Below, in pieces: positions 42 to 46,517 of a stretch of 64,000 nucleotides of DNA; position 1 is the first letter of the stretch; every line of letters begins with the position of its first letter. The notes below the pieces were generated by a model. That model was not told the origin of the DNA, ran no database searches, and saw only the letters and a list, made by a program, of their open reading frames with translations. Position numbers and translations under genes: made by a program. The stretch spans positions 33,046,001-33,110,000 of the forward strand of contig OZ116700.1 of assembly GCA_964199315.1 (NCBI GenBank). Direction: 5' to 3'. Origin of the DNA: Orbicella franksi. Its lineage: Eukaryota.

Positions 42-605
42 TTTCTCTAACTTTTTTCATAATTTTCTTGCCAAGTCTCTCTGGATTCTCTTGAGTTGGC
101 ACTTCAATGATGTTTTTCTTTAGTGCAGTAGTCTTTTCTAGTTCCTCTCGATTCACTTTCCTTCCTATTCCAACCGGAATAACCTTAACCCAAAACTCTT
201 CCAGTGCCATTGCAGATTTCAAGACGTCTTTCTCGGTGCTCCCTGACTTACTGTCCACCAAGAAAACAAGAACTTTCTTTGCATCTGGCCGAGCTCCGGG
301 TGCTTCAAACACCTTCTTCGCATCTGCCAATGCAAGATCTAAATCAGGCGTACCGCTCACAGTAGACAGGCTCTCAAGCTTCTTCAACAAGGCTTGTTCA
401 TCTGGGAATGTATCTTGGAAGTCCACAACTGTTCTTGTTATCGAGCCGTATGTCATGACGGTGTAATGGATGTTCTTCATGCCATGTGCTGCCACAATGG
501 AGAGTAAAGTTTCTTTCATTAAACCAAACGTTTCCTTTGCTTCCGTTGAGGAAGCACTGACTGCAAACACCAGGTCAATTTTCTCTTGGCCAAGTGGGTC
601 TGGAA
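42..605 (-). CDS. vWA 26 (last module visible; gene continues beyond the window)
   Basis: IDLVFAVSASS..RPDAKKVLVFLVD; donor GAAA|gtgagt at 41. Confidence 0.92.
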
Positions 606-2019: not shown

Positions 2020-2060
<41 letters not shown>

Positions 2061-5000: not shown

Positions 5001-5172
5001 TCATTGGATCGTCGGTGTCCTTTGTGAAACATGTAAAATAACTTTTCTTTTAACTGGCTGCGTGGCATTTTTAACTCTTACGTTATTTCGGGTAGCCAGC
5101 ACCCCTATCATTTTTATTTTTACTGTAGCAAAACATTGTCATTTCTAACTCCGAGGGGAAATAAAGTTCTTT

Positions 5173-5216
<44 letters not shown>

Positions 5217-21722: not shown

Positions 21723-21755
<33 letters not shown>

Positions 21756-30163: not shown

Positions 30164-30200
<37 letters not shown>

Positions 30201-33200
30201 CTGGTTATTTTCATCAGTTACACTATGTCACGAGCTCGTCACGCATAGCATTTGCCAGATTGTTGAAAGGATTTACCAGGACCCAGTTACACACTTGGGG
30301 AACGAGGTTCTCTACGAACAAAGCATTTCAAGCACCTACGACACCATTTGCTACTCTAACATGTGTTTGCAAGAGTTAATATAGGCCAATCTGCCTCGGG
30401 GTCAAAACGAGTCTCCCTGCAAGGCCTTTCATACGAGGACTTTTTTTGAAAAAGAGGCACAAGGTAATTCAGAAATGATCTATTGCATAACAATACGATC
30501 TATCGCAAGCACAGTACCTTTAAAAGCAAGTTCCATAACCTCGACAGCTAAGTTATCAGAGTCCTCAGTCTTCTTGGCACGAATGACATGACGGCCATCT
30601 GTTGCTACATCCTTGAGCTCAGTCACGTCACTCTCACTTCCCAGTGCGATGGCAATAACTTTAATACCCTGGTCTCTAAGCTCTTTTGCTTCAGCCTGTG
30701 CCATCTGCTCATTCCCGGTTGATTTCTTGTCTGTAAACACGACGAGAACTTTGCGCGCATTTGGACGAGCTCCTCCGGAAGCAAAAAGCTGTTCTCCCTG
30801 TGCGAGCCCCTTCTCTAGACTTGATCCACCAGCCGCAGGTGTCACTGATGAAAGATATTGCTTCAAGTCGTCTTCCTTGGCAAAAACTCGCTGGAAATCA
30901 AAGACTGTCTTGGCGTCGTTTCCATACACCACAACACCATACTTAATGCGGCTAATGCTGTACTGGTCAATGATGGAATTGATGACAGATTTCATTTTGG
31001 CAAAATTCTTGCTAGCGTCAGATGCCGAGGCACTCAAAGCGAAACCAAGATCCACCATAGGGACAAACTCCATAGCTAAAATTGACAACAAAACATTTCA
31101 CACGTCAGGCAAAACAAGGGATACACAGTTCACGTGGCTACAACTTTATTATGTCTGCCTTTTCATATTCACGTTTAACCTGTACCCATACAATGAGCAT
31201 AAGCCTATCCTTTTTGTTGAATGTAATATCGCGGTGTCATCATAGCATCGATAGGTGTTCAATGATGATGTTAAATTACAATATTTAGGGAGGAAGCCAC
31301 ATCAGTCTTAGCTGATTTTCATGCAGGTCCTCTATCCTGGTTTAATTGGAATTTGGAGATGTTGGCTTTTGTGGAGGGAGGAAAACCGGAAAACCCGGAG
31401 AAAAACCCTCGGAGCAAGGCGAGAGCCAACGACAAACGCAACCCACATATGGCACAGGGGCGGAATCGAACCCGGGCCACAACGGTAGGAGGCGAACGCT
31501 CTCACCACCAACTGTGTCATTCCTGCTCCCCAAAACAAGTTGTGTGAAATTAAACTTTACTTCAAGTCTGATTCAAAATCGTTTCAACACTTTTACTGTT
31601 GAGGAGAAAAGGCATTACTGACTAATGGTGAGGCAGTGCTGAAAGCATATAGCCCCGCACACATTCAACAACGTTGTTTCAATACATTACAACATTGATT
31701 TAAAACAATGAAATCTCTTGACAAGACCTTTGATTTTAAGACAACCAAACAAACAAAACATGAAACTTACGTTTAACGGCCTCTTTCATGATTCTATCAC
31801 CAAGCTGCTTAGGGCTCTCTTCGGGATCTTCTTCAAGACTGTTATCTTTCATGGGTGATAGTGGACGCAATTCACTCTGATCCGACTCAGTTCCCATGGC
31901 AACCGTGATGACCTTGACACCCATGTCGTGTAGCTCGTCCGCTGTGGGTTGCATCTTAGCTTTGTCGCCAGTCGCTTTGCTGTCAGTCATTATCACCAAT
32001 ACGTTACGGCGTTTAGGAATGTCTCCACTAAACACCTCTTTTGCATTCTCAAGAGCAGCTGGTAAATCCGCTCCACCGCGTACTCGTTGAACCATTTTCA
32101 CGAGATTCTTGAGTTGTTCATCGTTGCTAAAACTCTCGGTCAACTGGATTCGCGACACGGCTGTGCTTCCGTACACAGTCAGTCCGTACTTTATATTCCT
32201 CTGCCCGTAAGAATCAATGATTGAAGTGATGGTGTTGGTCATGCGGTCAAAGTTATCTTTCGCATCTTGCCCATTTGCGTTGATCGCAAACACAAGATTG
32301 AGAGGTTCTATTCCTGTAAAATTAGAAAACATTCGTTTGTGTAAAAAATGCAACGAAAAACATATATTACAGGAATAAAATGCCCCTTATAGTGTGACTC
32401 CTTATGGCGGCGCGGTGGCTCCATGTTTAGTGCGCTCGCTTCCGGATCAAGCGGTCCTGGTTCGAGTCATGGGGCCCGTTTCTCGAAGGTCCCGAAAAGT
32501 TTTCGCACTCGAAAGCCAGCGTAAGGTCTTAAACTTCATGATTTACAGAGCTGTTTTATTCACGTATCCTTAATATGACCAGAGGTTCCCTTCATACAAG
32601 AAGTTTCAGGCGTATATAGATACAGATTATAGATACAGATCTGTTAAGAGATACAGATTAACTAAAAATGGCTTCGCGTGCTCAAAACGTTTCCAGGGCG
32701 TTCGAGAAACGGGCCCCAGGTCGAGGACATTGTGTTGTGTTCGTGGGAAAGAAACTAAACTCTTACAGTGCCTCTCTCTTTACCCAGATGTAGAAATGGG
32801 TACCGGCGAATTTAATGCTGGGGAGTAACCCTGCGATAGACTGGCATCCAATCCAGGGGAAGTAGAAATACTCTTAGTCGCTTCATGCTACATAAACCGC
32901 AATAAGCGCCGGCCTGATGGGCCACTTGGCTCGTATGCAGACTTTACCTTACGGTCTGACTTCAATGCACTACAAAAAAAAAAGTTGTCCAACTTTACCT
33001 TGACACAAGTCCTTGGTGATTTTCTGCAAATTGCCTGCCAGCTGATCAAATGAACCTATCTTCATCACATTGTCAGAGTTTTCCATGGCAATGCTTTTCA
33101 GCTCACTATCAGGAGCTCCTGGTCCGAGACCAACAGCCAACACTTGCACTCCTTTAGTCTGCAGGGTGAAAAGTCCATGTAAGAATACAGAGTGGAAGTA

Positions 33201-36200
33201 ACATAGATTTTGAGCGCAAGCAAGCCGGAAAGAGTTGACATCGCCTTAAATTTCTAGTTTGTAAATTTCAGTTTCAGTTATTTGTTGCAAAACAACGACA
33301 ATTTCTCTTCCAGTTCTGTCGTAAAAATGGACACGAGAGAGCAATCATGGATTTTCCAAATAACAAATAAACACTTTTCACTTAGTGTCGAAGGTAATCC
33401 AGACGTAATCCGGGATTGTTTTGGTTTTGCTTTACTACGCATTGTGATTGGTTTAAAAAAATCTCGCGCCGCCTACTCGACCAATCGCATACAAAACGAA
33501 AACTAATCGCGACTGGTCACTCGCGTTTTCGCGCGCTTTTCGCCGTTTACACATACTTGCTGCGAACTCTTATTACACAAATTCGTTGCTTTGTCTTTGC
33601 TTCTGCTGATCGGCCATTGATAGTAATAATTTTGGTTTTGGTTTTACAACACGCAAGTAAAAACCCGCTTTAAAATACTGAACTACTATTGCCAATTCTA
33701 AGCTGCTGTATTATGAATATTTAGAAACGTCAATGATCCATTATGGAGAAGCCCGGAAAAAATCGAAACGAGGCTCAGCACTTTACCTTCAGAGGCGCTA
33801 AAACTGTTGCATAAGGCATAGAACCTTCACTAGTACTTCCATCAGTGAGGACAATCAAAAACTTTGGCACACCCTTCCTTGCCCCACCCCTCTCAGTAAA
33901 CAGTCTCTCGTTCGCCATTTTAATAGCTTTGTCTGTCCGCGTACGGCCTGGGTCGTATTTCATGTCCATGATCTTTTCTCTCAGAACCTCAGGGTTGTAC
34001 AAAGAGGTATCAGAGAAGTCGAAGTCCAGGATGGCGTCTTCATTGTAGTGAACGAAGCCAAAGTGAGTTCCGTCTTTAGACACATCAAAGTACTCTGTGA
34101 GCTTGGCGAGCGAGCGTTTGACAGTCTCGTAGTTCTTCCACCCAACACTCCGAGATGAATCCACAATTACACCAATGTCCATGGAGTGAACGCAGGCTAG
34201 AAAAAACACAAACTGGATAGTAACACCTCCCAACTCAAAAACGTTTTCCGATTGGAAGAGAAGGTGTCATGGGTCAAACCTCACTAACTCCCTAGGGTGA
34301 CCAAACTCACTAACTCCCTAAGGAAACAACAACTTGAACTTTCGACTCGCACGTGATCAGGTCGAGCACTTTGAAGCTGCGCCAAATTTGTGTCAGCCGG
34401 CATCAAGCGAATAATTTTTTCGCTGTTTTTTTATTATTATTTTTCAGTTGGGGAGTATAACAAAACACTTAATAACTGGCCCCACGGAAAACAGCAAGTT
34501 TTGAACTCACTCTTTCCCTTGGGGCCAGTCATTAAGTGCTTATTGGCTACGACTTAGTACCACTTAGTATCCACGGTACAGTGGGACCCCGACTTACCAG
34601 ATGAAAACAAGACTACTGATGTCGACATCATTTCTCCGTATTTTTATTAATAAGTCTTACCTCCGCAAAGCCCCGTGTCCGACACTGCCACTTCTCTGCT
34701 CTCACGGCAAGCTGTCGCCTTCAAGACACACTCATTAGTGTAATCCCGACCGTCTGTTCCACATACGGGTTCTTCAACCTTTGGGCACTGATTATCGCAC
34801 ACACACTCTGTCCTTCCATCGTTGTACGAAACACACTGGGAATAGTGCTCACATAATTTCTGCTTCTTCTCGCAGGGATCTGAAATAGAGAGGAAGGGAA
34901 AGGGTCACGTGCGTTGATGGCAAAGTTTGTTAGATATTTGCGCCATTACCAAAGAGTTTCTAGGGTAAAAGCTCCTTTGAAACTAACGGCTCGCCAACTT
35001 GAAGGCTCCAACGTAGTAGTACCGCATCTGTTAAAGGCTTTTATAACACAGAACGACTTAATATATCATGACAGGGTTTGTCCAACTTCATTTCCTTAGC
35101 ATAAAGCAAGGAGAACTATTTCCCCTAGCAAACTCGCAACAAATCAGCCATCCGTATTTCCAACAATTAGTCAGGACTTATTCATACAGGTTGTGAGGAC
35201 AAGGGAAAAGGTATTTTAAAGTCTTTGGCAAAGCTCACATTTAAACCACTGAACTTCAAATGCAGTGCACATACTTTCCCTACGACAGCAAGTCCCTGAA
35301 TCATCAAACCAACAAAACAGTAGTGTTAAATTACCTTTTACTATCACTTCGTAAACTTTTGGCACTAACGACGGCAGATCTCTGACGCTGTTAAAATCAA
35401 ACACATATTCATCGCCTGAAGTGAACGTCAACAGTTTCGGTTTGTCTGGAATGTCACCCACAGCCACCGCCACGATCTTGATTCCCTTGCTTATCAAAGG
35501 TGATGCTGCATCGCGCAATGCTGTATCCCCTTCATTAACTCTCTCCCCTGTCAAAACTATCAATCCTTTTATTGCCTGAGGTCTCAGCAGTTTAGGATCG
35601 CCAAACAGCTGGGTCTGAGAACTGCGTAAAGCAACAACCACCGTGCCGCCTCGTGTTAAACGCAGCTTATCTACCTTGTCCTTGAGATTGTCTGTGTCAA
35701 AGTTTTCAAACTTGGCTATAACTGTACCCGAGCCATAGTCAATGATGCCCACGTGAATTCCACGAGTTGAAGTGCCATACGTGTCCAGGAACTGCTTGAT
35801 GAAGTCTTTCTGTTTCTGAAAAGTGCCCGAGGTGATCTGGCCTGCTCCGCCCAAGGCAAACACGAGGTCGACTTGTTTTTCTATACAAGTACAATACAAT
35901 CAGACAAAGTTGTTATTATTGAACACTCTGTGACTGAAATCACACAACTGAAAGCTATTTAATCTTGCTTATATGTGATTGCCTATTACGATATACAAGA
36001 TGTTCTGACTGCCGTCTGTAAAGGAAACCTAATTTTTTTTCCACTCAAACAAAAGCTACGGAGCAGTACTTTCATGCGGTACTGTTTATCATGCTGTACA
36101 AGGTGGTTCTAACTTTCAAGTCTGTGGATGAAACCCTAATGTGCGACCATTCAAATGAAAGCTATTGAGCAGTACTTTCATGTGGTACTGTTTATCATTC

Positions 36201-39200
36201 TGTATAAGGTGGTTCTAACTTTCAAGTCTGTGAATGAAACCCTAGTGTATGACCATTCAATTGAAAGCTATTAAGCACTGCTTTAATGTGGTACTGTTTA
36301 TTACGCTGTGCACTTAGTTGGTTTTAACTTAAGTCTGTGGATGAATACCCTGTCTGTGATCATTTAATAAAACGTATTAAGCAGTACTTAAATTTCGTAT
36401 ATAAAATCCTCTTTCCTGTTGAAAATTAAATTATATTATTCAGCTGAAATATAAACCTTACACTAGCGCACATCATATCAAACACATAACTCACGTATGC
36501 ATAGTCCAGCATGGAGCACCCTGACTTCATGGTATCTCTTACAGGCAGCTGCTGTCAGCTGGCAAATGTTGTCATATGACAAGCCATCAGTGCCGCACAC
36601 ACGATTCCTCGAGTTACCACAAGCAGCCGGGTCGGGACACTTGCATGTGGCAATTCCAGAGGGTGGTACCGTGCAATAAGAGTAGAATTTGCACTCAAGA
36701 CTCTTACAGCTAGGATCTGTACAAAAACAAAACCAGTATTGCGTTTCTTTAACATTAATTATAACATAGATAGGACCCTGCGTGCGCTCTGATTGGTCAA
36801 AACCCATGTTTTATCAGGGTATAAGACATAGAAAAAGCGTGTTTTATTGTTTTTCGCCACATTACCTCTATATCACAAAGCAAATGAAGAAGCCTAAGCC
36901 GTGTATTACACTATGACAAAACACTCCGGACATTTGAGAACACTTGAGAAATGTAGAAAACACGAGCCGCAGGCGAGTGTTTTCTACATTTCCCTCGTGT
37001 TCTCAAATGCCCGTCGTGTTTTATCACAGTGTAATACACGGCTCAGGCTTCTTTATTTGTCAAATAAGTTACTCAATTTATTAATAATTTAAAATAAAAA
37101 GAAACACTTCCTTGTACTGGCCGTAGTAAAGTTAGCGGTTTAAATTCGAGTTCTAATTTGGACTGTATTGACATTTTCAAGCTAAAACCACATTATAAAC
37201 TATCCTTTACTTGTTTTCCGCAATGAAATGTCAGTTTGAAGCAAAGGCAATCACTATTTTCCATTACAACAAACATAAACAAGATAAATTAGTGAAAGCT
37301 CGAAGCAAGTTCAATCCCAAGCGCCAACAAAAACCGTGTGTAGAAATTGACTTAGTATCTAATTGGTTGAGCAGGCGACACCAGTTTAATAAACCAGTTA
37401 CAGACAACGTAAGAAAACCTGAAGACATTATAGACTTTAAATGGGTTTCTTTCAACACTTATTTACGTAAAAAGGCGCTCTTTCTGATTTTGTCAACTTG
37501 TTCAAGGCGTTTTTAGCCACCAAAGGGTGTTTGTAGCTATTAAAGCCACAATTCAGTAACTCTGCAAAAAGGTAAGGCCTGATTTGTTCTGGATCCAGTC
37601 ATATGCCAGTGCTTCAGACCAGTCTCCATGGAAGGAAAAACTGTCTTTGCAACGGACTTAGAGGAAATGTTTTTCAATAAACTTAATCAGAGACTTACCA
37701 GTGATGCATCTTCCTCTGTGTCGAGGTACAATCCACTTCTGTTCCTGACAGGCTGCTAACTCCAGGGCAGCTAAGTTATTATAAGACTTGCCATCTGACC
37801 CACAAACTGGGCTGATAACATCACTGGTCACTGGGCTACACTCGCACTTTGGGACGTCACTTTTGACACATTTTGAGTAGAAATGACAGCGTTTCCATCC
37901 ACAAGTGTTCAAATCTGAGAGTAAAAAAGTAAATTCAGTAAACAAGAAAACAGACACCCATTCTTTGCCTGTTGGATTCTTGCCACATTCAAGAGATGTT
38001 TGAGAACCAACTCAAAAAATTCAAAAGCATGATGTTGCTCTAAACAGATACATGTGTAAGCTATCTTTGATTGGCTCTTTTTGCATCCAATGACAACCAA
38101 TCAGCGCATCATGCAGATTTCAGTTGTAATCATACAGCCATACACTGTGGAAAAAATATTCTTTAAGCAGATACTTCCTAACAAAAACACCTTCTTAAAG
38201 CTTAAAATTTCCGCAAAGCAGATGCCACCTCTACAAAGACATCCCTAATAAAGACATCTCTATATAGCAGTGAAATCCCAGAAGCAGAGATTTTCAATCA
38301 GCAGATAACTTCCCTAAGCCTGACCTGTTCTGAGGTTTTCTACCTACTGTAGAGACCTTTCTTAAATGGACACCTCCCCTAAGTCGACACCTCCCCAAAT
38401 GAGCAACTCCCTTATCTATAAAAACCACAATATACTTAATCACAATTAGCCTGATTCCTTACTTCAAACAGTGTTCTGTATTAGTTACATGTACCTTGCA
38501 GAATTTTGTTGACTGTTGGTTGCACCATCACCTTTAGCCGATCAGGTGACCCTACAGCCAAAATGAAGTCCATTTGTGAGGCTAGTGGTTTCACATTCTC
38601 TAAGCCTTTGTCAGCATCACCAACGAGAACAACTACAACTTTAACCCCTGCCTCCCTCAATGATTTAGCAATGACTGCAAGGCCTTGGGGGTAGGACACA
38701 CTACTTCCATCTGTGATAAGTACAACTGCCTGAGGAACAAGATTAAAATGAGAACTGGTTGAAAACTGGAATGGGAATTTAAGATGATAGGTGGATAGAC
38801 AGACAGACAGACAGACCTATAAACTTACAGAGGCACTGAGGAATGGAAAGATAAATAGATAGGCAGGCAGAGCAATGGATAAAGGGACAGAAAACAGAAG
38901 GAAGAAGTGATTGACATGTTAATTAAGTCATCATCATCATTACTATTATTATATCAATAGATGGATGGACAGACAGACAGACAGAAAGCACACAGACACA
39001 AGGAGATGTGAAGGTGAAGCTTGGGGCCTCAAGTATAAAGGAGGTTTTTGTCTGCAAATAAACTATCTATTAAACTATCTATTTTTTGTCTTATCGCTCT
39101 ACACGTGCATATAAAAAACATGGTATCACACCTTAGGGTACTGACTGTCTCTTAGCCTGCTGTCATACTCCAGACTATATAACAGACCAGGTACAGAATC

Positions 39201-42200
39201 TGCCAGTGCTTGCTCAAGTGTTGTTTTGTCTTTGGTACTTTGCAAAGTGTTGATATATGCAGGCAATGTAATATAGTTGTAAAATGTTACAAGATCCATC
39301 TTAGCTGTGCCACCAAGGTCAAACTTCAAAAAACCATGTGTTATTCCTTGCTCAGGAATCCGGAATCTGTTGCCCAGATCTTTGAAGAAACCTTTAGATT
39401 TTTGCACAACTTTTGGCTCATTCATACTGGTGGTGTCAATCGCAAACATTAGGTGGACAGGCTGTTTTACATCTGAAGATCGATAACATTAATGAAAATA
39501 TCATACTATTGTATAAGAAAAGAGAAAATCAACTTATACAAACTACTGTATTATAAAACAAGACCAAAGTGAACCTAGTTATACCAGAGAACCATGAAAT
39601 ACATAATTGGAGTTATCAATGAACAATAGAGCAACAACAACATTAGCTAGACTGTTTCCAACATCACTCTTTTTAGACTCTGATCTAAGGGACAGACCAT
39701 TATTTTTTCTAAGGGGGTGAGAGGGGGTTGGGCAATTTCCAAAAACAAAATTCCTGTGCAGCCAAAACTGCTGAAAATAGGTCAAAATAAAATCATGCAA
39801 GGGGAGCCATGGGGAAAAAAATCAAGCTTGAAAGTGTTTTCTACTATCCAAATCCTGTGTTTGACTTTTTAAAAAAATTCTTGCACAAGCAATTACCCAC
39901 CAAGAAAAATCATGCACAACCTAAAGGTGAGAAAAAATCTCATGCCACAGAACATTGCCCACCTCCACCCCCTTAAAAAAATGATGGTCCGTCCGTAAGA
40001 TCACCCTGAATTATGCTATCCTTTGAAATACCTACCGCAAGCTGCCATGCTCTTGACTGTGATTGTCTTCCTTTTGGAGCAAGAGTGCCTTTGAAGCTCG
40101 CATTCATTCTCATAAGTCATATCATCGCTTCCACAGACTGGCATGTTAGCCTTGGAGCAGTTTGAAGGACACTGACACATGTGACTGAGGCCATCACTGG
40201 ACCGGCGGCAGATGGAGTAGAATTCACAAACGATAGACTGGCAGGGATCTGAGAAAAGGGAATCAATTAGTTAATTTCTTGCACGCAAATGCAAATCAAG
40301 GATGCAATAAATGAGAATTATTAACGTTTCAAGAGCCAAACGACAAGCTTAATTAGAAGCTTGAGCATTAATCCACATAGATCAACACTGAGTTGAGAAA
40401 CTTGGCATCAAAATAACTGAGAGAGCTTCACTATATTGCTGTATTCTGATCTTTGTGTGCGCAATGTTCGTCCAAATATGCAAATGCCTTCCTCTGCAGG
40501 AGTACATGGAACATATCTCTTAGCACCAGTACTTCGCCAAAATCCAAAACGTTCGTACGCTGAAATGCCCATGGACGATCAATTGAAGTATTTTGCATGC
40601 GTCATCATCCTAGCAATTTTCTTCTGATGATCAACAATGCGATTATCAAAACATTGACTTAGCAGAAGAGAACCGTTTCGAAACCTCATCCTTTCAATGA
40701 GCCAGAATCTTTCAGCGCACAACGAAGACAACAACATGGCACTCAATAATCTTGCCGGGATCTCTCTTGCCTGCTGCGCTCAATCACGATCATACTTGCA
40801 GGAACTTTGGAACGGACCTTTGGAACGGACTTTTGAAACGGACTTTTGGAGCCGACTTTTGGAACGGGCAACAAGAACCTGAAGGATGTTGCAAATCGTT
40901 TGAAATAGGCGGTCACTTCCGACCGATGCCAAGAATTTTGAATAGACCTAACAAAATGAATGAGTTATTTCTTCCACTAAGCGCGTTTATTGATTCCAAT
41001 TTAAAATTTGTTTTTACTAGTAACTCTCTACTCTCTCTCGGCTCGTTCACTTACCTTCGTCTTGAGTACAAACAGTCTGTTCCAGCAGCATCTCCCCGAC
41101 AGGTCTACACTTGCCACACCAGCCACCGCACTTAGCAGACACCAAGGTGCCGTCCTTGGATTTTTTGTACTCGTGCATTTCAATTCCAGGAGGGAAACCT
41201 ATCGCTTGCCATTCTGTGGACGCCTTCAAGTGCAAGCCGGTATGAGTCAGGTCCACCTTAAAATGTCCCCTCCTGCACGCACCACCGTAATGCATCGAAA
41301 AGCAGTCGCCAGCCGAACCATAGGCGATTCTCCTTCCGAACGGATCCGACTTGGCGAAGGTGAAATCGTCTCGAACGATGGCCATCCTCGGGAGATCCAC
41401 ACGAACTTTTCGGAACTTCGTCAATCCGGCTGAGGAATAGTTCATCGCTCCAGGCTTTCCCTCACACTTGTACCTGGCCGAGTAGGGTCTGGGAGGCAGC
41501 CGTTTGGCGTAGATGTAGGCATAGTTGTTTTGCACGCCGGCTGGCAGCGTGACGTATTCTTTAGGTGAACTGGTATTCATACCATGACAGTAGACCTTCA
41601 TTGGTGTGTTACACTCTGGTCGTACATAAATGACGTACTCGCCGTCCGTAGAGCCGACGCCCGCATTTTTCAAACCTAAACAGCTTGTGGCACCTACAAA
41701 ATGAAAAATCTTGATGAGACAGGGATATCGTCACTTAGAAACGAGCTACACATCCATGAAACTAATTAACAATTTTTTCGTACAAACATTTGTACGTACA
41801 ATGTTTTCGTGCAAATCAATTATAAGCCCTTACATATTACCAATAAAAATTCTTACAACAGCCAGAGACGCAGATTCGTACCCAGTCACTATTTGCGTGT
41901 TTCGGGAGGAGAGCAGATTGGATACTAGAGTGGATTACGGCGCGCGGGGTGTCTTGGGAAGGGTCGAAATAGCCTCCCGCGCGCTTCACTCGATCCAGGA
42001 TATTTTCTCTTTGAAAAAATCAAATCTGACCCTTAAATAGCGACTGGGTACGAGTCTGCCAGAGACGCGAATCGGAAAGTTACGTTGATTTTGCATGACG
42101 TACCGCACTGCCCGAAGTGGAGTCGTGTAATATCCCTCTGAAATTGACATCTAGCGGCTCTCATGAGGCACGGATTGTTGTAGGTTCTACCATCTGTACC

Positions 42201-45200
42201 ACAGACTGGGTCGTATTGCCGGGTACAGTATATTCTACACTGACAGCGTAAACGGCCGCTTGAATCAGCGCCACACTCTCCACCATACTGACAGTTCCTT
42301 TCGTTGCACTCAACTCCTTGTTGGAAAGCTAGTATCCTGCCTCCGTTTTCAAAAGAATGGTCTGAAAAAACGGAAATTGCATTGAATTATATCCTCGTGT
42401 AAGTCTTTTTAACAACGAATATTATCACTCGTTCCTTCATCTATCGCTTCATCGACCCCACCCTCCCCCCCCACTCCATGGTTACGTCGCCCCTCGCCCC
42501 CCTCCCCCCAAAAAAACTTTCTTCTTTCTCTTGCTGGACTGCCGCTTAGCAAGAAACTAACCTAAAAAAAAATGGTTTTCCAGTAACTACACTACTTGTT
42601 CCCAGTATCTGCTCAGATAATAAGCATGGTTACGACATTACATGTGTTGTGAATGTCGCCTTTTCACTGGAAAACGATGTGCAGAGTACAGTATAGAGCT
42701 TTATAGAAAGTCCGCTGAGGTGAGTCAAATTCAAAATGATCATATCCGGCCAATCACAATACGTATAAATAAACCAATCAGAATTCATATTGTAAAGAAA
42801 AAACATGGTACCAATACCAAGCGTGGAAAAATGTAGCGGGTGCACATTCAGAAAAACTTTCGACGCCAAAACAAATTAATTTTGGTTTTATTCTCATCTG
42901 GTTGAAAAATACAGGCTTTTGTTTTATAATAGAGAACATGACAAAGTTTTGTTTTTGTTGTTAATTTATTTGTTTGTTTGCTTTTTTTTCTTCTTGTAAA
43001 TAAAGTTATTATTATACTAGTCAGTAACGGTAACCAAAACCCTAAGACTACAAGTAGTCCCTCTTTCGCTTAGCTCGTCGAGTGTGACCGTAATTCTGGG
43101 GGCGAGAAGCGCGAGAAAGGACGGATTTCGCGCGGCCATTTTTCCTCAAGGTTTTCTTTCACGCCAAGCATGGCGGACTGAATGAAAGAGGGGCTACTCG
43201 TGGTCTAACCCAAACCCCATCATTGAGGGTCTCAAGGAAACGAGGTCATGGCTTCCCACGGGGTTTAAAAATTACCCCGCACGTAACAGTTTTGTTGCCG
43301 CTGGTATAAGACATAGCATCATAAGTCGTGTTATCAGACCCATCCTCTTCTAATTGATAAAGGCGGGGCATCATGACAAATTCTAATCAGGTACCGCCGA
43401 CGTAATATAGAATTAGAACTGACATACCATACCAGAACATGAAAATTCTAAAATCTCTCAGCTGATCCCTACAACCTCACGTAATACATTAACAGGAAAT
43501 TTAGAATGTTTAGAGTCAATTCAACCGACGTTTGAAAAGGAAACTTGCCGATTTGTTTACTAATGGCTGTTTGGAACCAAACCCTTCTTTTAGTTTTGAC
43601 CTTTCGTGCTAGAGCTTGTAAAGATTTAGCTAAAAACTACGACTTAAAATAATGCCGGAAATAAGTGGATTCTGCATCAAAACGCTTTTTGTTTCACGTA
43701 TTGCACCGAAGCAGACATAAACACGACAAACAAATGATACTTTAAAAAAAAAAAAACGTTGATATGTGTTCTCTTATTCTCTAGTTAAAGTTTGACACGG
43801 TTTCCTTGTTGTGTGTGCTGAAGATTAATTTTGCAATGGCGCAGTTTTCATAATACGTCAAGTGGGTAAAATGTCATTGTAAACATGTTGGTTTATCGTC
43901 GGAAAAATACAGCATAAACAAACGTACAGAACAGTGGTTGAAAGGAGGAAATTAAGCTGCGAGATTAAAGTTCTTAACTTCTCCTTAACACGACGGTGTT
44001 TAAGCGGATTATTTTAACAGAAAATTAACACTGTATGTTATTTTCCATCTTCAACAGTCCAAGCTTTATTTCGTTTGAAACGTCTGGCTCACGTAGCTAT
44101 TGGTATTCTTACAAATATGTAACGCAGACCTCAATAAAAGCCCGAAAGTTTTCGCTTGTTGCTCAGTGAGAGTCCGCTGCGCAATAGGAGATTTCTAACA
44201 CTTATTCTTTTTTTGTGCCTAATATGTAGGAGTTCGTGGAAGCCAAACCCTGGAAATCGGTGGTCCACCTAGGACTGAGATGTTTTCAAGATCGTAACTG
44301 TTTAAACGGAACCGATGAATCCTTGCCGAGAGTGGATTCTTCGGTTCCTTTGACGCACCATGATCCGAGAGATCTTGGATTGATCTGTTTAGAAAAGAAA
44401 CGGAAAATCCGTTTTGGGATTTAAGAATTCAATCTTGGATTTTCTTAAAGAAACGCACCCCAAGTTTCTGCCATTTTTCTAGCTTGTTTCCTTGTCTGGA
44501 TTTTCTTGCGGGTTTTTCTGTCACTTGAGTTGGCTGTTTTGAATTTCATTCAACGTTTGAACCATTGCGCTAAGTAGTGTGAGGTATCTTCTTAGAGGCC
44601 AAACCGGCTTACCTCCCGAGATCGACAACCTGAGTAAACATTTAGCTGCAGGAGTAATGGACTTCTGGTAACTATTGTCGAAAACCGCGCGCGAAACTCC
44701 GTTTGTTTACTCATCTGAGATCGATCGCCTGAGCGCGGAAAATATCAACATAACTCATCTACCGTCAACCACGGACACAAAACAGGGTCCCAAAACGACT
44801 CGCTTATGCTTGTCTCGCGATTACGTTCGAATAAGTTCTACCGAGAAAACTGGCTGTTTTGGCGGCAGTGACAATTATGCTGCCCGAAGAGGAAAATTTT
44901 AAGCAGACCAAGAAAAATACAACATTACGCACAAGATCATCAGAAATTGTAACATGGCGACACAGAAAGAGTTGGAAGTCTGGTTAGCAAGGGACTATTT
45001 CATATCGAACAGAATTCGAGCAGGTCTGAGTGTTGAATCATAAGTAGGATAGAATCGAAGTTGGTGGCAATCTTTCCCAAACATACGGTATTTTGTTTGG
45101 AATGTTTTCGTCTGAGGCGAGAATGCCGCCCACCACTTTACATGAACAAGAAGTGGTATAACAAAATCGTGGTTTGGTTAATTAAAAGGAATCAAAAAGC

Positions 45201-46517
45201 ACTAAATGAACTAAGGTTCTTTCAACACTTTCATATCAAGAAAGAAATCGGCAAGATTAAAACCCTGAAGTCTTCTGGAACGCAAATAAATGTTTGCTAA
45301 AATAAATAATTAAAAGCCAATTAAAACTTCCACTTCCGGTTGGTTTCAGCAAGTTCTCAAATTTTCAGATCTCGAGTTTTCTCGCACTTGTTTTAGTTTA
45401 TATTAGTTTACAATATCTCAGTGATGTTTTGTTGTCAACGGGTTTGAAAAGCAGCACAGCAAAAGGAAATTAACAGTATTAACCGAGAAGATTCTAAATT
45501 CTAGCTAGTCCTTAAAATTTGATTAAAATAATGCAATAATTAACGGTATCATTATTTGACATATCTTTGGTATGATATATCCCGTTGGCGAAGATCGCCA
45601 TGTGACACAGTCTAGATAAATTCGGAAACTGATATTTTACTCAAATTAATCGAATCCTTGTTTATATCACAAGTATACTCGAGAACCTGACAAAAAAGGT
45701 TAATTGAATAATGTGTGGTCTAACGTTAGCTGAAATGAATCCACGTTTTGCGACGAGAAACATCTTGAAGGGAAGTTCGGCCTTTAGACCACATCCGTTT
45801 GTAATTACGATGACGTCATGTTTGCGGATAAACTGAGAGAAAAAGGCATGATTAAGAGTTTAACCTGGAACTTTTTCTCAAAACCGAGTTATTTCTGTAC
45901 CGTTAAGGTCAAAATACGATACGTGTGTTGAAACTTCGAGTGGGCGCAGTGATCATTTTTCGCCTCGTGTCATGTACGAGCATACGTTACCTCAAGAGCA
46001 CGCAACTTACATAACATTACACGAAGCGCTCTGCAACGAGTGGCGGCCATTTCAGCGAAATCGCATGTTGAGACATCACGCATTTAAATTTATTCATACC
46101 TGGAAGCGCTTTGAGAACCTCGTCCACCATTCGCATTGTAACGGGCAGGGAAGCAGCTGCGGTCAAAAAACCGCTTGAATGTCGTTTTGCAACCCAGAGC
46201 CTCACGTCTTCTAACTTGTGTTGATGATCACAAGACGGAGCTCTTTCAATGGCGTTTATTACAGTAACGTTACTCAGTTGTGAATCTCTTCGATATACAT
46301 TCCTTACGTGAACATGGGCTGTGACGTGATTGTTTTTTTCTAGGGACAATCTCGTTATTTCCCCAGTGAAAGCTACATAACCTTTTCCAGTAAATGTTGG
46401 CAGCGGACAGAATCTTGAAAACTCATCACTGGCAGCAAAACAGACCGTCCTCAAAAGGCAGAAAGCTGCAAGAATTCGAGGAAAAACCCCCGTTATTGAA
46501 ATTCCTTTCTCTTTCAT
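42..46517 (-). CDS. Giant secreted multidomain ECM protein (NtA, 5 follistatin/Kazal, GON, at least 26 vWA); 40 exons in window, 3'-incomplete
   Basis: Exons (plus-strand coordinates, transcript order): 46100-46517, 42104-42361, 41055-41693, 40036-40248, 39132-39472, 38495-38729, 37699-37914, 36495-36716, 35335-35880, 34661-34879, 33787-34196, 32999-33158, 31771-32313, 30518-31075, 29662-29981, 28695-28926, 27342-27896, 26718-26966, 25799-26107, 24250-24572, 23207-23438, 22523-22771, 21800-22120, 20756-21313, 19501-20049, 18379-18939, 17237-17791, 14316-14837, 13142-13699, 12100-12651, 11348-11676, 10658-10886, 9682-10233, 8742-9308, 6462-7013, 5301-5858, 3641-4192, 2440-2988, 1418-1978, 42-605. 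All introns are GT-AG and the phases are consistent throughout. No stop codon is reached. Confidence 0.88.
1151..1401. mobile_element. hAT-like MITE
   Basis: Degenerate TIR CATGGTTACCACAG / CTGTGGCAACCCT; internal CCCTGAC subterminal repeats. Confidence 0.55.
1418..1978 (-). CDS. vWA 25
   Basis: IDLMFLLSSQS..RPDARQILVVMTD. Confidence 0.93.
2015..2060. repeat. (CAA)n microsatellite
   Basis: Seen directly; it accounts for the poly-Leu ORF start. Confidence 0.95.
2440..2988 (-). CDS. vWA 24
   Basis: VDVVFAISATA..RPNAKKVLVIIAD. Confidence 0.93.
3361..3583 (-). mobile_element. tRNA-derived SINE (Ser-tRNA-headed family), full length
   Basis: Head GGCAGCCTGGCTGAGTGG..GGGTTCGAGTC carries A and B boxes; same family as 21641-21760. 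Confidence 0.8.
3641..4192 (-). CDS. vWA 23
   Basis: VDLGFIISAGS..RPNVQKVLVIITD. Confidence 0.93.
4687..4810. mobile_element. MITE with CAG termini (hAT-like)
   Basis: 12-bp TIR CAGTGGCGGATC / GATCCGCCACTG; no clean TSD. Confidence 0.72.
4815..5030 (+). repeat. Interspersed CCAAT-rich repeat family, copy 1
   Basis: GAGTGTCGAAAAGTAA..GATTGGCTTAAAA..CGCGCCACT..CAATCAGAAGTAAA..CGTTTTCCCGCGC recurs at 22930-23185 and 33380-33670 in the same orientation. Confidence 0.7.
5173..5226. repeat. (TTG)n microsatellite
   Basis: Seen directly. Confidence 0.95.
5301..5858 (-). CDS. vWA 22
   Basis: IDVGLAISMTS..RPDAKKILVVIID. Confidence 0.93.
6462..7013 (-). CDS. vWA 21
   Basis: IDLGFAIGAAS..RYDAQKVLVLMVD. 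Confidence 0.93.
7436..8037. mobile_element. piggyBac-like MITE
   Basis: TTAA|CCCTTTGAATACCAA ... TTGGTGTTCAAAGGG|TTAA. Confidence 0.82.
8168..8370. mobile_element. Palindromic MITE
   Basis: 19-bp TIR CAATAGAGGGATTCGGCTA / TAGCCGAATCCGTCTATTG, plus an inner inverted repeat TTCATTTGGGAGGTT / AACCTCCCAAATGAA. Confidence 0.75.
8742..9308 (-). CDS. vWA 20
   Basis: MDIVFAMNANS..RPGAKQVLIVLTD. Confidence 0.93.
9682..10233 (-). CDS. vWA 19
   Basis: LDLGFAIAAGS..RPHAKKVLVVITD. Confidence 0.93.
10658..11676 (-). CDS. vWA 18 (exons 11348-11676 and 10658-10886)
   Basis: TNLAFAISATG..RPNAAK|VLVIITDKSSG. Confidence 0.9.
12100..12651 (-). CDS. vWA 17
   Basis: LDLVFAISATS..REDADRALVIMTD. Confidence 0.92.
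12688..12838. repeat. Compound (GACA)/(GATA)/(CA) microsatellite
   Basis: Seen directly; a similar tract lies at about 38795-39000. Confidence 0.9.
13142..13699 (-). CDS. vWA 16
   Basis: IDLCFAISATA..RPNARKVLVVITD. Confidence 0.93.
14316..14837 (-). CDS. vWA 15 (shortened C-terminal half)
   Basis: IDVVFALTATT..RPSAKKILVLLTD; 522 nt versus 543-570 nt for the other array modules. Confidence 0.9.
14988..16745. mobile_element. 1.76-kb non-autonomous DNA transposon with long TIRs and a TTA target duplication
   Basis: Left ATCAGGAGCCATCATCGGGGACGGAGACCGTAAGC..GATATGGGACAAT..TATTTTTAGAACAAATTGCGCCATC is mirrored at the right end (..GCTTACGGTCTCCGTCCCCGATTATGGCTCCTGAT). TTA occurs at 14985-14987 and 16746-16748. 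No transposase ORF. Confidence 0.85.
16891..17131. mobile_element. Truncated copy of the TTAGTATAAATCTACTAG element, ending in (GCCCTC)7
   Basis: Colinear with 25180-25378; the right end is replaced by the hexamer repeat at 17090-17131. Confidence 0.7.
17237..17791 (-). CDS. vWA 14
   Basis: IDLVIAISSVS..RSDAHKVLVVITD. Confidence 0.93.
18379..18939 (-). CDS. vWA 13
   Basis: VDLAFALSASS..RANATKVLVVMTD. Confidence 0.93.
19501..20049 (-). CDS. vWA 12
   Basis: IDIAFALSASG..RKDATHVLVVITD. Confidence 0.93.
20186..20354. mobile_element. Palindromic MITE (a deleted relative lies at about 30380-30483)
   Basis: GGCCGTTTCC..CTCAAAGCGAG / CTCGCTTTGA..GGAAATGGAC inverted arms. Confidence 0.6.
20547..20703. 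mobile_element. Tc1/mariner (pogo-like) MITE
   Basis: TA|CAGTCGAACCCCTATTAAGCGGCCA ... TGGCCGTTTAATAGGGGTTCCACTG|TA. Confidence 0.88.
20756..21313 (-). CDS. vWA 11
   Basis: VDVAFAISANS..RPNAWKVLVVITD. Confidence 0.93.
21349..21640 (+). mobile_element. tRNA-derived SINE with a CORE (MIR-like) central domain
   Basis: A box TGGCCTCATGG and B box GGGTTCGAGCC. TGTGTTCTTGGGCAAGACACTTTACTCTCACAGTGCCTC..GTATAAATGGG resembles the MIR CORE. Other copies are at 32406 and 63959. Confidence 0.8.
21641..21760 (-). mobile_element. 3'-truncated Ser-tRNA-headed SINE
   Basis: GGCAGCGTGGCCGAGTGGTTAGGGCGCTGGACTTGAAATCC..GGGTTCAAGTCCC (TGA anticodon-like loop); homologous to 3361-3583. Confidence 0.8.
21800..22771 (-). 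CDS. vWA 10 (exons 22523-22771 and 21800-22120)
   Basis: VDLVVAMCAVS..LPKPK G|SPTSPVLDQAL..RVNAKKVLLVFTD. Confidence 0.9.
22930..23185 (+). repeat. Interspersed CCAAT-rich repeat family, copy 2
   Basis: Homologous to 4815-5030 and 33380-33670. Confidence 0.7.
23207..24572 (-). CDS. vWA 9 (exons 24250-24572 and 23207-23438)
   Basis: VDVIFAVGATS..RPNAMK|VLVVITDD. Confidence 0.9.
24634..24989. mobile_element. Harbinger-like MITE
   Basis: TGA|AGGCCCCGTCCACA ... TGTGCACGAAGCCT|AA; degenerate TIR with an internal GTGTGGACGG repeat. Confidence 0.6.
25180..25378. mobile_element. Short non-autonomous element with 18-bp inverted ends
   Basis: TTAGTATAAATCTACTGG / CTAGTAGATTTATACTAA. Confidence 0.75.
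25799..26966 (-). CDS. vWA 8 (exons 26718-26966 and 25799-26107)
   Basis: IDLAFALSATG..MPRSST G|GPDLEKAL..RPTARKVLVVIMD; phase-1 internal intron. Confidence 0.9.
26184..26554. mobile_element. MITE with (GACGGC)n-rich inverted ends
   Basis: AGAGATTTCAAGTAACCGCGACGGCGACGGC / GTTGCCGTTGCTGTCGTGGTTTTCTTGAACTCTCT. Confidence 0.65.
27161..27338. other. Assembly gap (178 N) flanked by (TTTG)n
   Basis: N run inside the intron between vWA 7 and vWA 8. Confidence 0.99.
27342..27896 (-). CDS. vWA 7
   Basis: VDLGFALSASS..RPLTHKVLVIMAD; the donor lies just before the N gap. Confidence 0.9.
28695..29981 (-). CDS. vWA 6 (exons 29662-29981 and 28695-28926)
   Basis: VDLAFALSATAT..RPQARK|VLVIITDKKSG; phase-0 internal intron. 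Confidence 0.9.
29253..29323 (-). mobile_element. tRNA-like head (SINE or tRNA pseudogene fragment)
   Basis: TTGGTCGGTAGAGC..GTGGGTTCGAATCCCAC has A and B boxes but no intact cloverleaf. Confidence 0.55.
30518..31075 (-). CDS. vWA 5
   Basis: VDLGFALSASAS..RPNARKVLVVFTD. Confidence 0.93.
31293..31531 (-). mobile_element. tRNA-derived SINE with a V-domain-like core
   Basis: Head ..GGTGAGAGC..GGGTTCGATTCC; core GGTTTTTCTCCGGGTTTTCCGGTTTTCCTCCCTCCACAAAA; second copy at 51737-51974. Confidence 0.8.
31771..32313 (-). CDS. vWA 4 (first of the tandem array)
   Basis: LNLVFAINANG..IKYGLTVYG..VLVIMTD..VITVAMG. Confidence 0.92.
32406..32950 (+). mobile_element. CORE-like SINE interrupted by a MITE
   Basis: Segments 32406-32470 and 32718-32950 are colinear with the 21349-21640 copy. 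Confidence 0.82.
32471..32717. mobile_element. PIF/Harbinger-like MITE nested in a SINE
   Basis: TIR GGGGCCCGTTTCTCGAA / TTCGAGAAACGGGCCCC. Confidence 0.85.
32999..34196 (-). CDS. vWA 3, canonical MIDAS (exons 33787-34196 and 32999-33158)
   Basis: CVHSMDIGVIVDSSRSVG (DxSxS), GRTRTDKA (T), IVLTDGST (D), ..VLAVGLG..KDLC; flanking Cys pair. Confidence 0.92.
33380..33670 (+). repeat. Interspersed CCAAT-rich repeat family, copy 3
   Basis: Homologous to 4815-5030 and 22930-23185. Confidence 0.65.
34661..34879 (-). CDS. Follistatin/Kazal module 5 (missed by the ORF track)
   Basis: [49 protein letters not shown]..TGLC. Confidence 0.92.
35335..35880 (-). CDS. vWA 2
   Basis: VDLVFALGGAG..HVGIIDYG..KGLIVLTG..KIVAVAVG; phase 1-1. 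Confidence 0.9.
36050..36390. repeat. Tandem repeat, 106-bp unit, about 3 copies
   Basis: GAGCAGTACT-like anchors at 36061, 36167, 36273 and 36379. Confidence 0.9.
36495..36716 (-). CDS. Follistatin/Kazal module 4
   Basis: CKSLECKFYSYC..CKCPDPAAC..VCGTDGLSYDNICQLTAAAC..AGLC. Confidence 0.92.
36881..37059. repeat. About 180-bp imperfect palindrome (foldback element)
   Basis: CAAATGAAGAAGCCTAAGCCGTGTATTACACT..AAATGTAGAAAACAC | GTGTTTTCTACATTT..AGTGTAATACACGGCTCAGGCTTCTTTATTTG. Confidence 0.8.
37699..37914 (-). CDS. Follistatin/Kazal module 3
   Basis: CGWKRCHFYSKC..CECSP..PVCGSDGKSYNNLAALELAAC..RGRC; the third Kazal Cys is replaced. Confidence 0.88.
38495..39472 (-). CDS. vWA 1 (divergent; exons 39132-39472 and 38495-38729)
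   Basis: VHLMFAIDTTSM..YPK|AVVLITDGSS..VKVVVVLVG; phase-0 internal intron. Confidence 0.8.
40036..40248 (-). CDS. Follistatin/Kazal module 2
   Basis: DPCQSIVCEFYSIC..CQCPSNC..PVCGSDDMTYENECELQRHSC..AAC; phase 1-1. Confidence 0.92.
40805..40869. repeat. 13-bp minisatellite, 5 copies
   Basis: (Y)TTTGGAACGGAC x5. Confidence 0.8.
41055..41693 (-). CDS. GON domain (ADAMTS9/ADAMTS20/GON-1 C-terminal type)
   Basis: SC..DGEYVI..KVYCHGM..PKEYVTL..AGLTKFRKVRVD..DFTFA..AGDCFS..GHFKVDLTHTGL..KSKDGTLVSAKCGGWCGKCRP matches the ADAMTS9 GON motifs (PKEYVTL, TAGDCYS, GKCGGYCGKC). Confidence 0.92.
41871..42058. mobile_element. MITE with a perfect 9-bp TSD (Mutator/Merlin-like)
   Basis: TIR CAGATTCGTACCCAGTCACTATTT / AAATAGCGACTGGGTACGAGTCTG; CCAGAGACG at 41862-41870 and 42059-42067. 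Confidence 0.88.
42104..42361 (-). CDS. Follistatin/Kazal module 1 (missed by the ORF track)
   Basis: [46 protein letters not shown]..HFGQC; ten-Cys FS pattern; phase 1-1. Confidence 0.92.
43045..43206. mobile_element. Short MITE
   Basis: AGACTACAAGTAGTCCCTCTTTC / GAAAGAGGGGCTACTCGTGGTCT. Confidence 0.65.
46100..46517 (-). CDS. Exon 1: signal peptide and agrin N-terminal (NtA) domain
   Basis: MKEKGISITGVFPRILAAFCLLRTVCFA is a hydrophobic leader. CP..VAFTGEI..AHVHVRNVYR..TVINAI..SCDHQHKLEDVRLWV..ASLPVTMRMVDEV aligns by eye to agrin NtA (CP..VVLTGTV..CKVRVWRYLK..VVISGF..ICDNQVSTGDTRIFFV..SSLMRITLRNLEEV). Donor CCAG|gtatga. Confidence 0.8.

What the first reader, a model, noticed from the sequence alone, without database searches (positions are those of the whole stretch)
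42..46517. Giant (>5,500 aa) chimeric secreted protein: agrin NtA + follistatin + GON + at least 26 vWA domains
Seen in sequence: 40 exons splice in frame into signal-NtA-FS-GON-FS-vWA-FS-FS-vWA-FS-vWA-(vWA)x23+, still open at the window edge. Established knowledge: NtA followed by FS repeats is the agrin N-terminus, GON is the C-terminal domain of ADAMTS9/20/GON-1, and long vWA arrays are typical of collagen VI alpha-3 and matrilins. I know no characterised protein that combines these. Inference: a basement-membrane-anchored filamentous matrix or adhesion protein, possibly part of mesoglea, skeletal organic matrix or skeleton attachment. Automated pipelines would probably split it or label it collagen VI-like.
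Basis: partly seen in the sequence, partly recalled or inferred. Interest (0 to 1): 0.88.

Follow-up and report, generated by a model that had tools for sequence, protein, structure and literature searches.

The report
Giant coral matrix protein gene
The window holds the first 40 exons (5,540 residues, still open) of a very large secreted coral matrix protein. It joins an agrin-like N-terminal domain, follistatin modules and a GON domain to a chain of at least 26 von Willebrand A domains, a combination I found described nowhere.

Summary
On the minus strand, 40 GT-AG exons (46517 down to 42) splice into 5,540 codons without a stop. The order is signal, NtA-like, FS, GON, FS, vWA, FS, FS, vWA, FS, vWA, then 23 more vWA. 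It is still open at the window edge.

The assembly gap (27161-27338) starts 3 nt after the donor of a complete vWA exon. It is therefore intronic and the frame does not depend on it.

One 5,031-nt spliced RNA contig joins exon 1, FS1, GON, FS2, vWA1, FS3, FS4 and the start of vWA2 at exactly the predicted junctions. By length it runs on to about vWA5.

Pfam confirms GON, five Kazal/FS modules and VWA. Exon 1 has no Pfam hit, but its predicted fold matches agrin NtA best (Z 10.6), and one ortholog scores weakly on Pfam NtA.

A distant relative keeps the first 11 head exons in the same order, followed by more vWA exons.

Not shown: RNA linkage of vWA6-26, the C-terminus, and any function. Laminin anchoring and a beaded matrix scaffold are inference.

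Verdict: a real, expressed gene with a new architecture made of known ECM modules. The scan noted several other giant VWA proteins in this genome, and an unchecked note on the adjacent window says this array continues there.

The parts
46100..46517 (-). Exon 1: start codon, signal peptide (about residues 1-31) and NtA-like domain (about residues 33-139)
   Evidence: The ATG follows an in-frame stop and there is a hydrophobic N-terminus. AF2 model has pLDDT about 90 over residues 40-139. Best PDB matches are agrin NtA. The donor at 46100 is joined to 42361 in the RNA contig.
42104..42361 (-). FS1 (follistatin/Kazal module, 10 Cys)
   Evidence: Pfam Kazal_1 6e-12. Spliced piece of the X11 contig.
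41055..41693 (-). GON domain, one exon
   Evidence: Pfam GON 1e-51, profile positions 2-193 of 199. Spliced piece of the X11 contig.
40036..40248 (-). FS2
   Evidence: Pfam Kazal_2 5e-11. RNA contig.
38495..39472 (-). vWA1 in two exons (39472-39132 and 38729-38495); partial MIDAS motif DTTSM
   Evidence: Pfam VWA 5e-5 on the second half. Junction seen in the RNA contig and in one polyA read. Alignment.
37699..37914 (-). FS3 (8 Cys)
   Evidence: Pfam Kazal_2 5e-10. RNA contig.
36495..36716 (-). FS4
   Evidence: Pfam Kazal_1 1e-7. RNA contig.
35335..35880 (-). vWA2, no MIDAS motif
   Evidence: Pfam VWA 2e-20. The loose end of the RNA contig equals its first 30 nt.
34661..34879 (-). FS5
   Evidence: Pfam Kazal_2 1e-12.
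32999..34196 (-). vWA3 in two exons (34196-33787 and 33158-32999); the only vWA with a full MIDAS motif (DSSRS...T...D)
   Evidence: Pfam VWA 2e-26. Motif table.
27342..32313 (-). vWA4 (32313-31771), vWA5 (31075-30518), vWA6 (29972-29662 and 28926-28695), vWA7 (27896-27342)
   Evidence: Model. Pfam VWA on vWA4 and vWA7. The vWA7 donor GTA directly abuts the N run.
27161..27338 (.). Assembly gap, inside the intron between vWA7 and vWA8
   Evidence: An (AAAC)n run follows the gap. The frame does not depend on the gap.
17237..26966 (-). vWA8 (26966-26718 and 26107-25799), vWA9 (24572-24250 and 23438-23207), vWA10 (22771-22523 and 22120-21800), vWA11 (21313-20756), vWA12 (20049-19501), vWA13 (18939-18379), vWA14 (17791-17237)
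   Evidence: Pfam VWA on vWA11.
42..14837 (-). vWA15 (14837-14316), vWA16 (13699-13142), vWA17 (12651-12100), vWA18 (11676-11348 and 10886-10658), vWA19 (10233-9682), vWA20 (9308-8742), vWA21 (7013-6462), vWA22 (5858-5301), vWA23 (4192-3641), vWA24 (2988-2440), vWA25 (1978-1418), vWA26 (599-42; donor GT follows, frame open)
   Evidence: Pfam VWA on vWA16, vWA20 and vWA26. A related contig, L013, carries vWA23-26 and four more vWA exons after them.

Best explanation
This is the 5' part of one very large, expressed coral gene for a secreted modular extracellular-matrix glycoprotein. The part in the window is about 605 kDa with pI 5.2.

Shown:
- The 40-exon open frame.
- The identity of the GON, FS/Kazal and VWA modules.
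- An NtA-like fold in exon 1.
- Splicing of exon 1 through the start of vWA2 on one RNA contig.
- The same head exon order in a distant relative.
- Repeat-by-repeat orthologs in many taxa, shown for vWA16.

Inferred:
- After the signal peptide is cleaved, the NtA-like domain lies at the free N-terminus, as in agrin, and may dock the molecule on a laminin coiled coil.
- The FS modules and the GON domain form a compact cysteine-rich head that carries three divergent vWA domains. One of these (vWA3) has a complete metal-ion site and could bind a ligand in a cation-dependent way.
- The 23 or more cysteine-poor vWA domains without a metal site form a long beads-on-a-string arm, like the N-terminal arm of collagen VI alpha-3. 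Such an arm would offer many weak protein-binding surfaces for building or bridging a matrix network.
- Because every module exon is phase 1-1, exons can be skipped without breaking the frame, so isoforms of different length are likely.
For: - Gene model: 40 GT-AG exons, 5,540 codons, no stop.
- Pfam: GON 1e-51, Kazal on 5 of 5 FS exons, VWA on all exons tested.
- vWA count: 26 domains and no stray vWA remnants on either strand.
- RNA: a 5,031-nt contig of run X11 is laid in 7 pieces at exactly the predicted junctions. All skipped parts are CT..AC on the + strand. Its loose ends equal the end of exon 1 and the start of vWA2. It runs 2,120 nt further downstream. Single polyA reads of X24 cross three of the junctions.
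- Exon 1 fold: Foldseek's top 4 PDB hits are all agrin NtA (E 6e-5, rmsd 2.8 A). VIA-align gives Z 10.1-10.6 over model residues 33-139. In AlphaFold DB clusters the top hit and five more are named Agrin and match at their N-termini. Ortholog P0008 scores E=3e-4 on Pfam NtA.
- Ortholog locus (ENA contig ctg140593): 11 successive head exons are colinear at 37-60% identity, followed by vWA4, vWA5 and the start of another.
- Age of the array: array repeats are only 34% identical to each other on average (maximum 47%). vWA16 has its own orthologs in 22 clusters at 96% down to 59% identity. No exon pair reaches 80% nucleotide identity. The array is therefore old, conserved and not an assembly artefact.
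- Gene start: the upstream neighbour (a BCAS2-like last exon at about 49.3 kb) and about 369 nt of 5'UTR on the contig bound the start.
Against: - No RNA evidence links vWA6-26 to the head.
- Run X11, which carries the head at depth 108, is not among the 14 best RNA holders of 42-5991. The cut-off there was 0.39, against about 0.47 expected if all five exons were assembled. This is a mild negative, or a listing effect.
- The window's own exon 1 has no Pfam NtA hit, and a profile of 7 orthologs finds no agrin chain by sequence.
- No protein longer than 326 aa in 1.84 billion representatives carries the exon-1 domain, so no independent full-length model exists.
- There is no RGD motif, no furin site and no SGxG glycosaminoglycan site in the window part.
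- Localisation, binding partners and function are untested.
Confidence: 0.7

Rival explanations
1. The head and the distal array are not always one product. The locus might give a shorter head protein (NtA-FS-GON-FS-vWA..., ending near vWA5 or later). The long array would then be used only in rare isoforms, or be a separate transcription unit.
For: The RNA contig stops about 242 nt into vWA5 by length. X11 is not listed among the RNA holders of the distal 6 kb. All exons are phase 1-1, so any subset can be spliced.
Against: Between vWA5 and vWA26 there is no stop codon, no exon with a start codon and signal peptide, and no gap in the phase-1 series. Introns are short, 0.4-2.4 kb. Logan contigs break at any branch, so a contig end is not a transcript end. 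The ortholog keeps vWA exons directly after vWA3.
Confidence: 0.18
2. It acts mainly as a polyvalent regulator rather than as a structural filament. The five Kazal/FS modules would inhibit serine proteases or trap growth factors, and the vWA chain would only park them in the matrix.
For: All five FS exons match Kazal inhibitor models. Agrin-like Kazal-rich proteins in octocoral skeletons have been read as protease inhibitors (PMC7533068).
Against: Only 5 of the 33 domains that follow the signal peptide are FS, while 26 are vWA. No inhibitor activity was tested. FS modules in agrin and follistatin mostly serve binding rather than inhibition (my own knowledge).
Confidence: 0.08
3. The array is a decaying or artefactual repeat: a pseudogene remnant or an assembly duplication.
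For: There is an assembly gap inside the array. Public collections hold only fragments.
Against: The frame has 5,540 codons without a stop, against a chance of about 10^-158. Every exon keeps canonical splice sites. Repeats are 23-47% identical and none shares 80% DNA identity with another. vWA16 has orthologs down to 59% identity.
Confidence: 0.02

Closest known systems
Agrin (vertebrate AGRN and invertebrate agrins)
   Same: A signal peptide is followed directly by an NtA-fold domain and then by follistatin/Kazal modules with 10 cysteines. The NtA crystal structures 1JB3, 1JC7, 1PXU and 3I70 are the best structural matches of exon 1.
   Different: Only 16-18% identity to NtA, and no Pfam NtA hit for this protein. 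A GON domain and vWA domains interrupt the FS series. No SEA, laminin-EGF or LamG domain and no SGxG glycosaminoglycan site lie in the 5,540 residues seen. The C-terminus is unknown. It is not an agrin ortholog.
Collagen VI alpha-3 (also alpha-5 and alpha-6), N-terminal vWA arm
   Same: A long tandem run of vWA domains, mostly one phase-1 exon each, lacking the metal-ion site and free to be skipped in splicing. (The collagen VI features are from my own knowledge.)
   Different: At least 26 domains here, against 10 in COL6A3. No Gly-X-Y triple helix in the window. The head is NtA, FS and GON instead of nothing. The array repeats have almost no cysteine (4 in 4,248 residues).
ADAMTS9, ADAMTS20 and C. 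elegans GON-1
   Same: A full-length GON domain (Pfam 1e-51). In those proteins it is needed for ER-to-Golgi transport independently of protease activity (PMC3338439).
   Different: Here GON sits near the N-terminus between two FS modules. The RNA contig shows no protease, disintegrin or TSR exons before it.
Cnidarian vWFA-repeat matrix proteins (Nematostella NV2.11346 with WAP/vWFA repeats; Hydra Hcol3) and Corallium rubrum agrin-like skeletome proteins
   Same: Large secreted cnidarian proteins that mix vWFA or FOLN/Kazal modules with inhibitor-type modules (PMC12549020; PMC7853314).
   Different: Those are described with WAP, TY, C345C or collagen parts. None is described with NtA or GON, or with a vWA run of this length.

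Membership tests
Agrin | NtA domain recognised by sequence (Pfam PF03146 at or above its gathering score of 25.1 bits) | tested here: not met
   The window's exon 1 has no hit even at E<=10. Orthologs reach 21.1 bits (E=3e-4) and 13.6 bits. A profile of 7 orthologs finds no agrin chain in the PDB sequences.
Agrin | NtA fold (OB-like beta barrel with a C-terminal helix) at the mature N-terminus, followed by FS modules | tested here: met
   Foldseek's top 4 PDB hits are NtA, TM 0.55-0.59, rmsd 2.8 A. VIA-align gives Z 10.1-10.6, against 8.9 for the next fold. The FS1 exon follows directly in the RNA contig.
Agrin | C-terminal half with SEA, laminin-EGF/EGF and three LamG domains | not testable with these tools
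   None lies in the 5,540 residues of the window. The gene runs off the window, so the C-terminus was not seen.
Agrin | Laminin gamma-1 coiled-coil binding by NtA | not testable with these tools
   This needs a binding assay. I could not map the residues because no residue-level structural alignment was available.
Collagen VI | Gly-X-Y triple-helical domain | tested here: not met
   There is none in the window's 40 exons. Sequence beyond the window was not seen.
Collagen VI | Tandem vWA domains without a metal-ion site, encoded by single phase-1 exons | tested here: met
ADAMTS9/20/GON-1 | Reprolysin protease, disintegrin-like domain and TSR repeats upstream of GON | tested here: not met
   The spliced RNA contig joins signal/NtA-like exon 1 to FS1 to GON with nothing in between.
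VWA domain superfamily (Pfam PF00092) | Profile match above the gathering score | tested here: met
   Nine exons scored 64-94 bits against a cut-off of 23.8, and the vWA1b exon scored 24.0. The remaining exons match an HMM built from the repeats.
Follistatin/Kazal module | Kazal profile match plus the 10-cysteine FS pattern | tested here: met
   Five of five exons match Kazal_1 or Kazal_2 above the cut-off. Four have 10 Cys and FS3 has 8.

The most novel reading that the evidence does not exclude
The gene may not end near the window. With the adjacent window's unchecked 38 vWA, a second GON and 20 FS modules, it would encode one protein of more than 14,000 residues. That would put it among the largest animal proteins. 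Its NtA-like tip would really bind laminin, which would mean the agrin-type anchor (NtA plus FS) existed before bilaterians and was first used on a vWA filament.
Probability: 0.25. Interest if true: 0.75.

Novelty: new variant of a known kind. Interest (0 to 1): 0.55.

Why it matters
NtA is treated as a domain unique to agrin (PMC3927612), and agrin is figured among the ECM proteins common to bilaterians (PMC3308698). In every paper I found, GON is discussed only in ADAMTS9/20/GON-1. Here both sit in the head of a coral protein whose body is the longest vWA run I am aware of.

The head order is kept in a distant relative. That makes it a conserved anthozoan gene, not a one-off shuffle.

The gene offers a concrete test of whether the agrin-type laminin anchor predates bilaterians. 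It is also a candidate for a major, so far unannotated, structural component of coral matrix.

Its weight is tempered in three ways. Cnidarian genomes are known for new combinations of ECM modules. This scan already lists several other giant vWA proteins, and several GON domains outside ADAMTS, in the same genome. No function was tested.

Tried and rejected
- Pfam on exon 1 at E<=10 gave nothing.
- PDB sequence searches with a 7-sequence profile and with ortholog P0008 gave only chance-level hits: CD47 and thioesterases.
- An exhaustive representative search with exon 1 gave 10 hits. All were ORF-style fragments of 326 aa or less, so it yielded no full-length model and no names.
- The ESM Atlas search with the GON exon found only GON/COLFI-like clusters and no architecture.
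- The search for homologous proteins with a vWA16 reference found only single-exon ORFs of 199-352 aa. It found no transcript-derived protein joining neighbouring repeats. The length filter bars long candidates, because no long stop-free reference exists.
- While walking along the ortholog, one step used a transposon gene and landed on another contig.
- The second run search, meant to test whether X11 also holds the distal array, was inconclusive because only the 14 best RNA holders are listed.
- Literature searches for GON or NtA with vWA in corals or cnidarians found no such protein.
- A skeletal-matrix role is rejected as unsupported. The Acropora, Corallium and octocoral skeletome papers list different vWA or agrin-like proteins.
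- The pseudogene and assembly-artefact readings are rejected.

Full report
**Observation.** Stop-free stretches on the minus strand form a regular series. I scored donors and acceptors around each one and assembled a model of 40 exons from 46517 down to 42. Every intron is GT..AG. Every module boundary is phase 1. Seven vWA domains are split by one extra intron. The spliced frame has 5,540 codons and no stop. With this strand's base composition, the chance of that is about 10^-158. The ATG at 46517 is preceded by an in-frame stop. A GT donor follows base 42, so the frame leaves the window open.

**The gap.** The N run is 27161-27338. The vWA7 exon ends ...AAG ATT CGA G|GTA and the next base is N. 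Aligned with the other 25 repeats, vWA7 ends where they all end and vWA8 begins where they all begin. Both sides are phase 1. The gap is therefore in an intron and the frame does not depend on its length. An (AAAC)n run on the far side probably caused it. I did not look up the missing letters. A further exon could hide there only if the true gap is several times longer than estimated.

**Domains.**
- Pfam gives GON at 1e-51 over 192 of 199 profile positions.
- All five FS exons match Kazal_1 or Kazal_2 above the cut-off.
- VWA is above the cut-off on every vWA exon tested.
- Four FS exons carry 10 cysteines each and FS3 carries 8.
- An HMM built from the repeats finds 33 exon hits, which make 26 domains. 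It finds none elsewhere on either strand, including the longer introns.
- Only vWA3 has the complete metal-ion site (DSSRS, T, D). vWA1 has DTTSM. The 23 array repeats have Ser/Ala-rich replacements.
- The array has 4 cysteines in 4,248 residues.
- The window part weighs about 605 kDa with pI 5.2.
- It has no RGD, no R-x-K/R-R furin site and no SGxG site.

**Exon 1.** Pfam finds nothing, even at E<=10.
- An exhaustive search of 1.84 billion representatives found ten relatives. All are short ORF-style calls that begin with a signal-like stretch, and none is agrin.
- Seven of them, aligned (A1), gave an AlphaFold model with pLDDT near 90 over residues 40-139. It has five strands and a C-terminal helix.
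- Foldseek against the PDB puts the four agrin NtA entries first (E 6e-5 to 2e-4, rmsd 2.8 A over 108 columns, 18% identity). They are followed by other NTR-type domains: complement C3, meteorin, PCOLCE and TIMP-1.
- VIA-align gives the four NtA entries Z 10.1-10.6 over model residues 33-139. The next fold scores 8.9.
- In AlphaFold DB clusters the top hit and five further hits are named Agrin, matched at their N-termini.
- Ortholog P0008 scores E=3e-4 (21.1 bits, cut-off 25.1) on Pfam NtA across most of the profile.
- Sequence searches of the PDB found no agrin chain.

I therefore call it NtA-like. The fold and the position match agrin's. Family membership by sequence is not met.

Run X11 (RNA-Seq cDNA) holds one 5,031-nt contig at depth 108. 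It is laid in seven pieces that are precisely FS4, FS3, vWA1b, vWA1a, FS2, GON and FS1. All six skipped parts are CT..AC on the + strand.
- Its loose end on the upstream side is the last 30 nt of exon 1 before the shared CAG.
- Its loose end on the downstream side is the first 30 nt of vWA2.
- It continues 2,120 nt downstream. Under the model, that reaches 242 nt into vWA5.
- It continues about 369 nt upstream of the ATG.
- Single polyA reads of X24 cross three of the junctions.

For vWA6-26 there is no RNA evidence. A second run search showed that X11 is not among the 14 best RNA holders of 42-5991. The cut-off there was 0.39, against about 0.47 expected if all five exons were assembled. I count this as a mild negative of uncertain meaning. 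The case for continuity rests on four points:
- the unbroken phase-1 series;
- short introns;
- no start or signal exon inside the array;
- the ortholog.

**Relatives.** In an ENA assembly (contig ctg140593 and a second contig), the exon-1 relative P0008 is followed in order by FS1, GON, FS2, vWA1a, vWA1b, FS3, FS4, vWA2, FS5 and vWA3. Identity to the window's protein is 37-60%. Transposons sit in some of the introns. vWA4, vWA5 and the start of another vWA follow directly.

A search with vWA16 found its own orthologs in 22 clusters at 96% down to 59% identity. That is far above the 34% mean (47% maximum) between repeats within the protein. The array is therefore older than these lineages, and each repeat is kept.

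No exon pair shares 80% DNA identity, so the array is not an assembly duplication.

A related 7.9-kb contig (L013, 87-92% protein identity) carries vWA23-26 and then four more vWA exons. The array therefore continues past the window. This agrees with the unchecked note on the adjacent window (38 vWA, a second GON 47.65 kb before the window's start, and 20 FS).

The only named relative found is a 352-aa hypothetical VWFA protein of Desmophyllum pertusum at 36% identity.

**Mechanism.** The following steps are inferred.
- The protein is secreted.
- The NtA-like domain is at the mature N-terminus and may bind a laminin coiled coil as agrin's does.
- FS, GON and three divergent vWA domains form a head with one cation-dependent binding site (vWA3).
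- The vWA chain without metal sites is a long multivalent arm like that of collagen VI alpha-3.
- In ADAMTS9/GON-1 the GON domain promotes ER-to-Golgi transport (PMC3338439). Whether it helps export of this very large cargo is speculation.
- Phase 1-1 exons allow isoforms of different length.

Nothing ties the protein to the skeleton. The skeletome papers I read list other proteins.

**Comparison and novelty.**
- It is not an agrin ortholog. It has no sequence-level NtA, and no SEA or LamG domain was seen.
- It is not a collagen VI chain, because there is no triple helix in the window.
- It is not an ADAMTS, because no protease precedes GON.
- It is a new architecture built from known ECM modules, conserved among anthozoans.
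- Public collections represent it only as fragments.
- No paper in the library describes NtA or GON together with vWA.
- Other notes of this scan list several further giant vWA proteins, and GON domains outside ADAMTS, in this genome. That lowers the surprise.

**Verdict.** The gene is a new variant of a known kind. Interest is 0.55.

Noticed in passing
window 36650-37250 and 39650-39900: Two intronic stretches show very high read depth on both strands in all RNA runs. They carry many variant letters and joints between opposite strands. They look like copies of high-copy transposable or hairpin elements, unrelated to the gene's exons.
   Followed up: partly
window 31271-31534 vs 51718-51977; 21417-21639 vs 32722-32946: These are the only dispersed repeats of at least 150 bp and at least 80% identity in the window (85% and 88%). 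Three of the four copies lie in introns of the gene and one lies upstream of it.
   Followed up: partly
window 49317-49499 and 52899-53123, minus strand: Exons of a BCAS2/SPF27-like splicing-factor gene lie upstream on the same strand. Pfam BCAS2 is weak on the matching ORF of L004. Its last exon ends about 2.4 kb before the 5' end of the RNA contig.
   Followed up: partly
window 61093-62856, minus strand: A 588-residue open frame with no Pfam family. It may be a large exon of another gene.
   Followed up: no
proteins P0009 and P0010: Two database relatives of exon 1 differ from it only by changes expected from C-to-T conversion (S>F, P>L, T>I, A>V, H>Y, R>W). They look like ORFs called on assemblies of bisulfite-treated DNA.
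   Followed up: no
L008 4587-6212 and 16690-20432; L010 11130-15539: Introns of the ortholog carry a reverse-transcriptase ORF and a cluster with SAP, YqaJ-type exonuclease and DDE_Tnp_4 (Harbinger-type) genes. An identical 92-aa ORF of that cluster recurs on many contigs.
   Followed up: partly
window 46518-46540, minus strand: A three-codon upstream ORF (ATG TGG TAA) ends 12 nt before the start codon.
   Followed up: no
window 27100-27160 and about 2000-2070: An (AAAC)n microsatellite abuts the assembly gap. A triplet run that reads as poly-Leu lies in the intron before vWA25.
   Followed up: no
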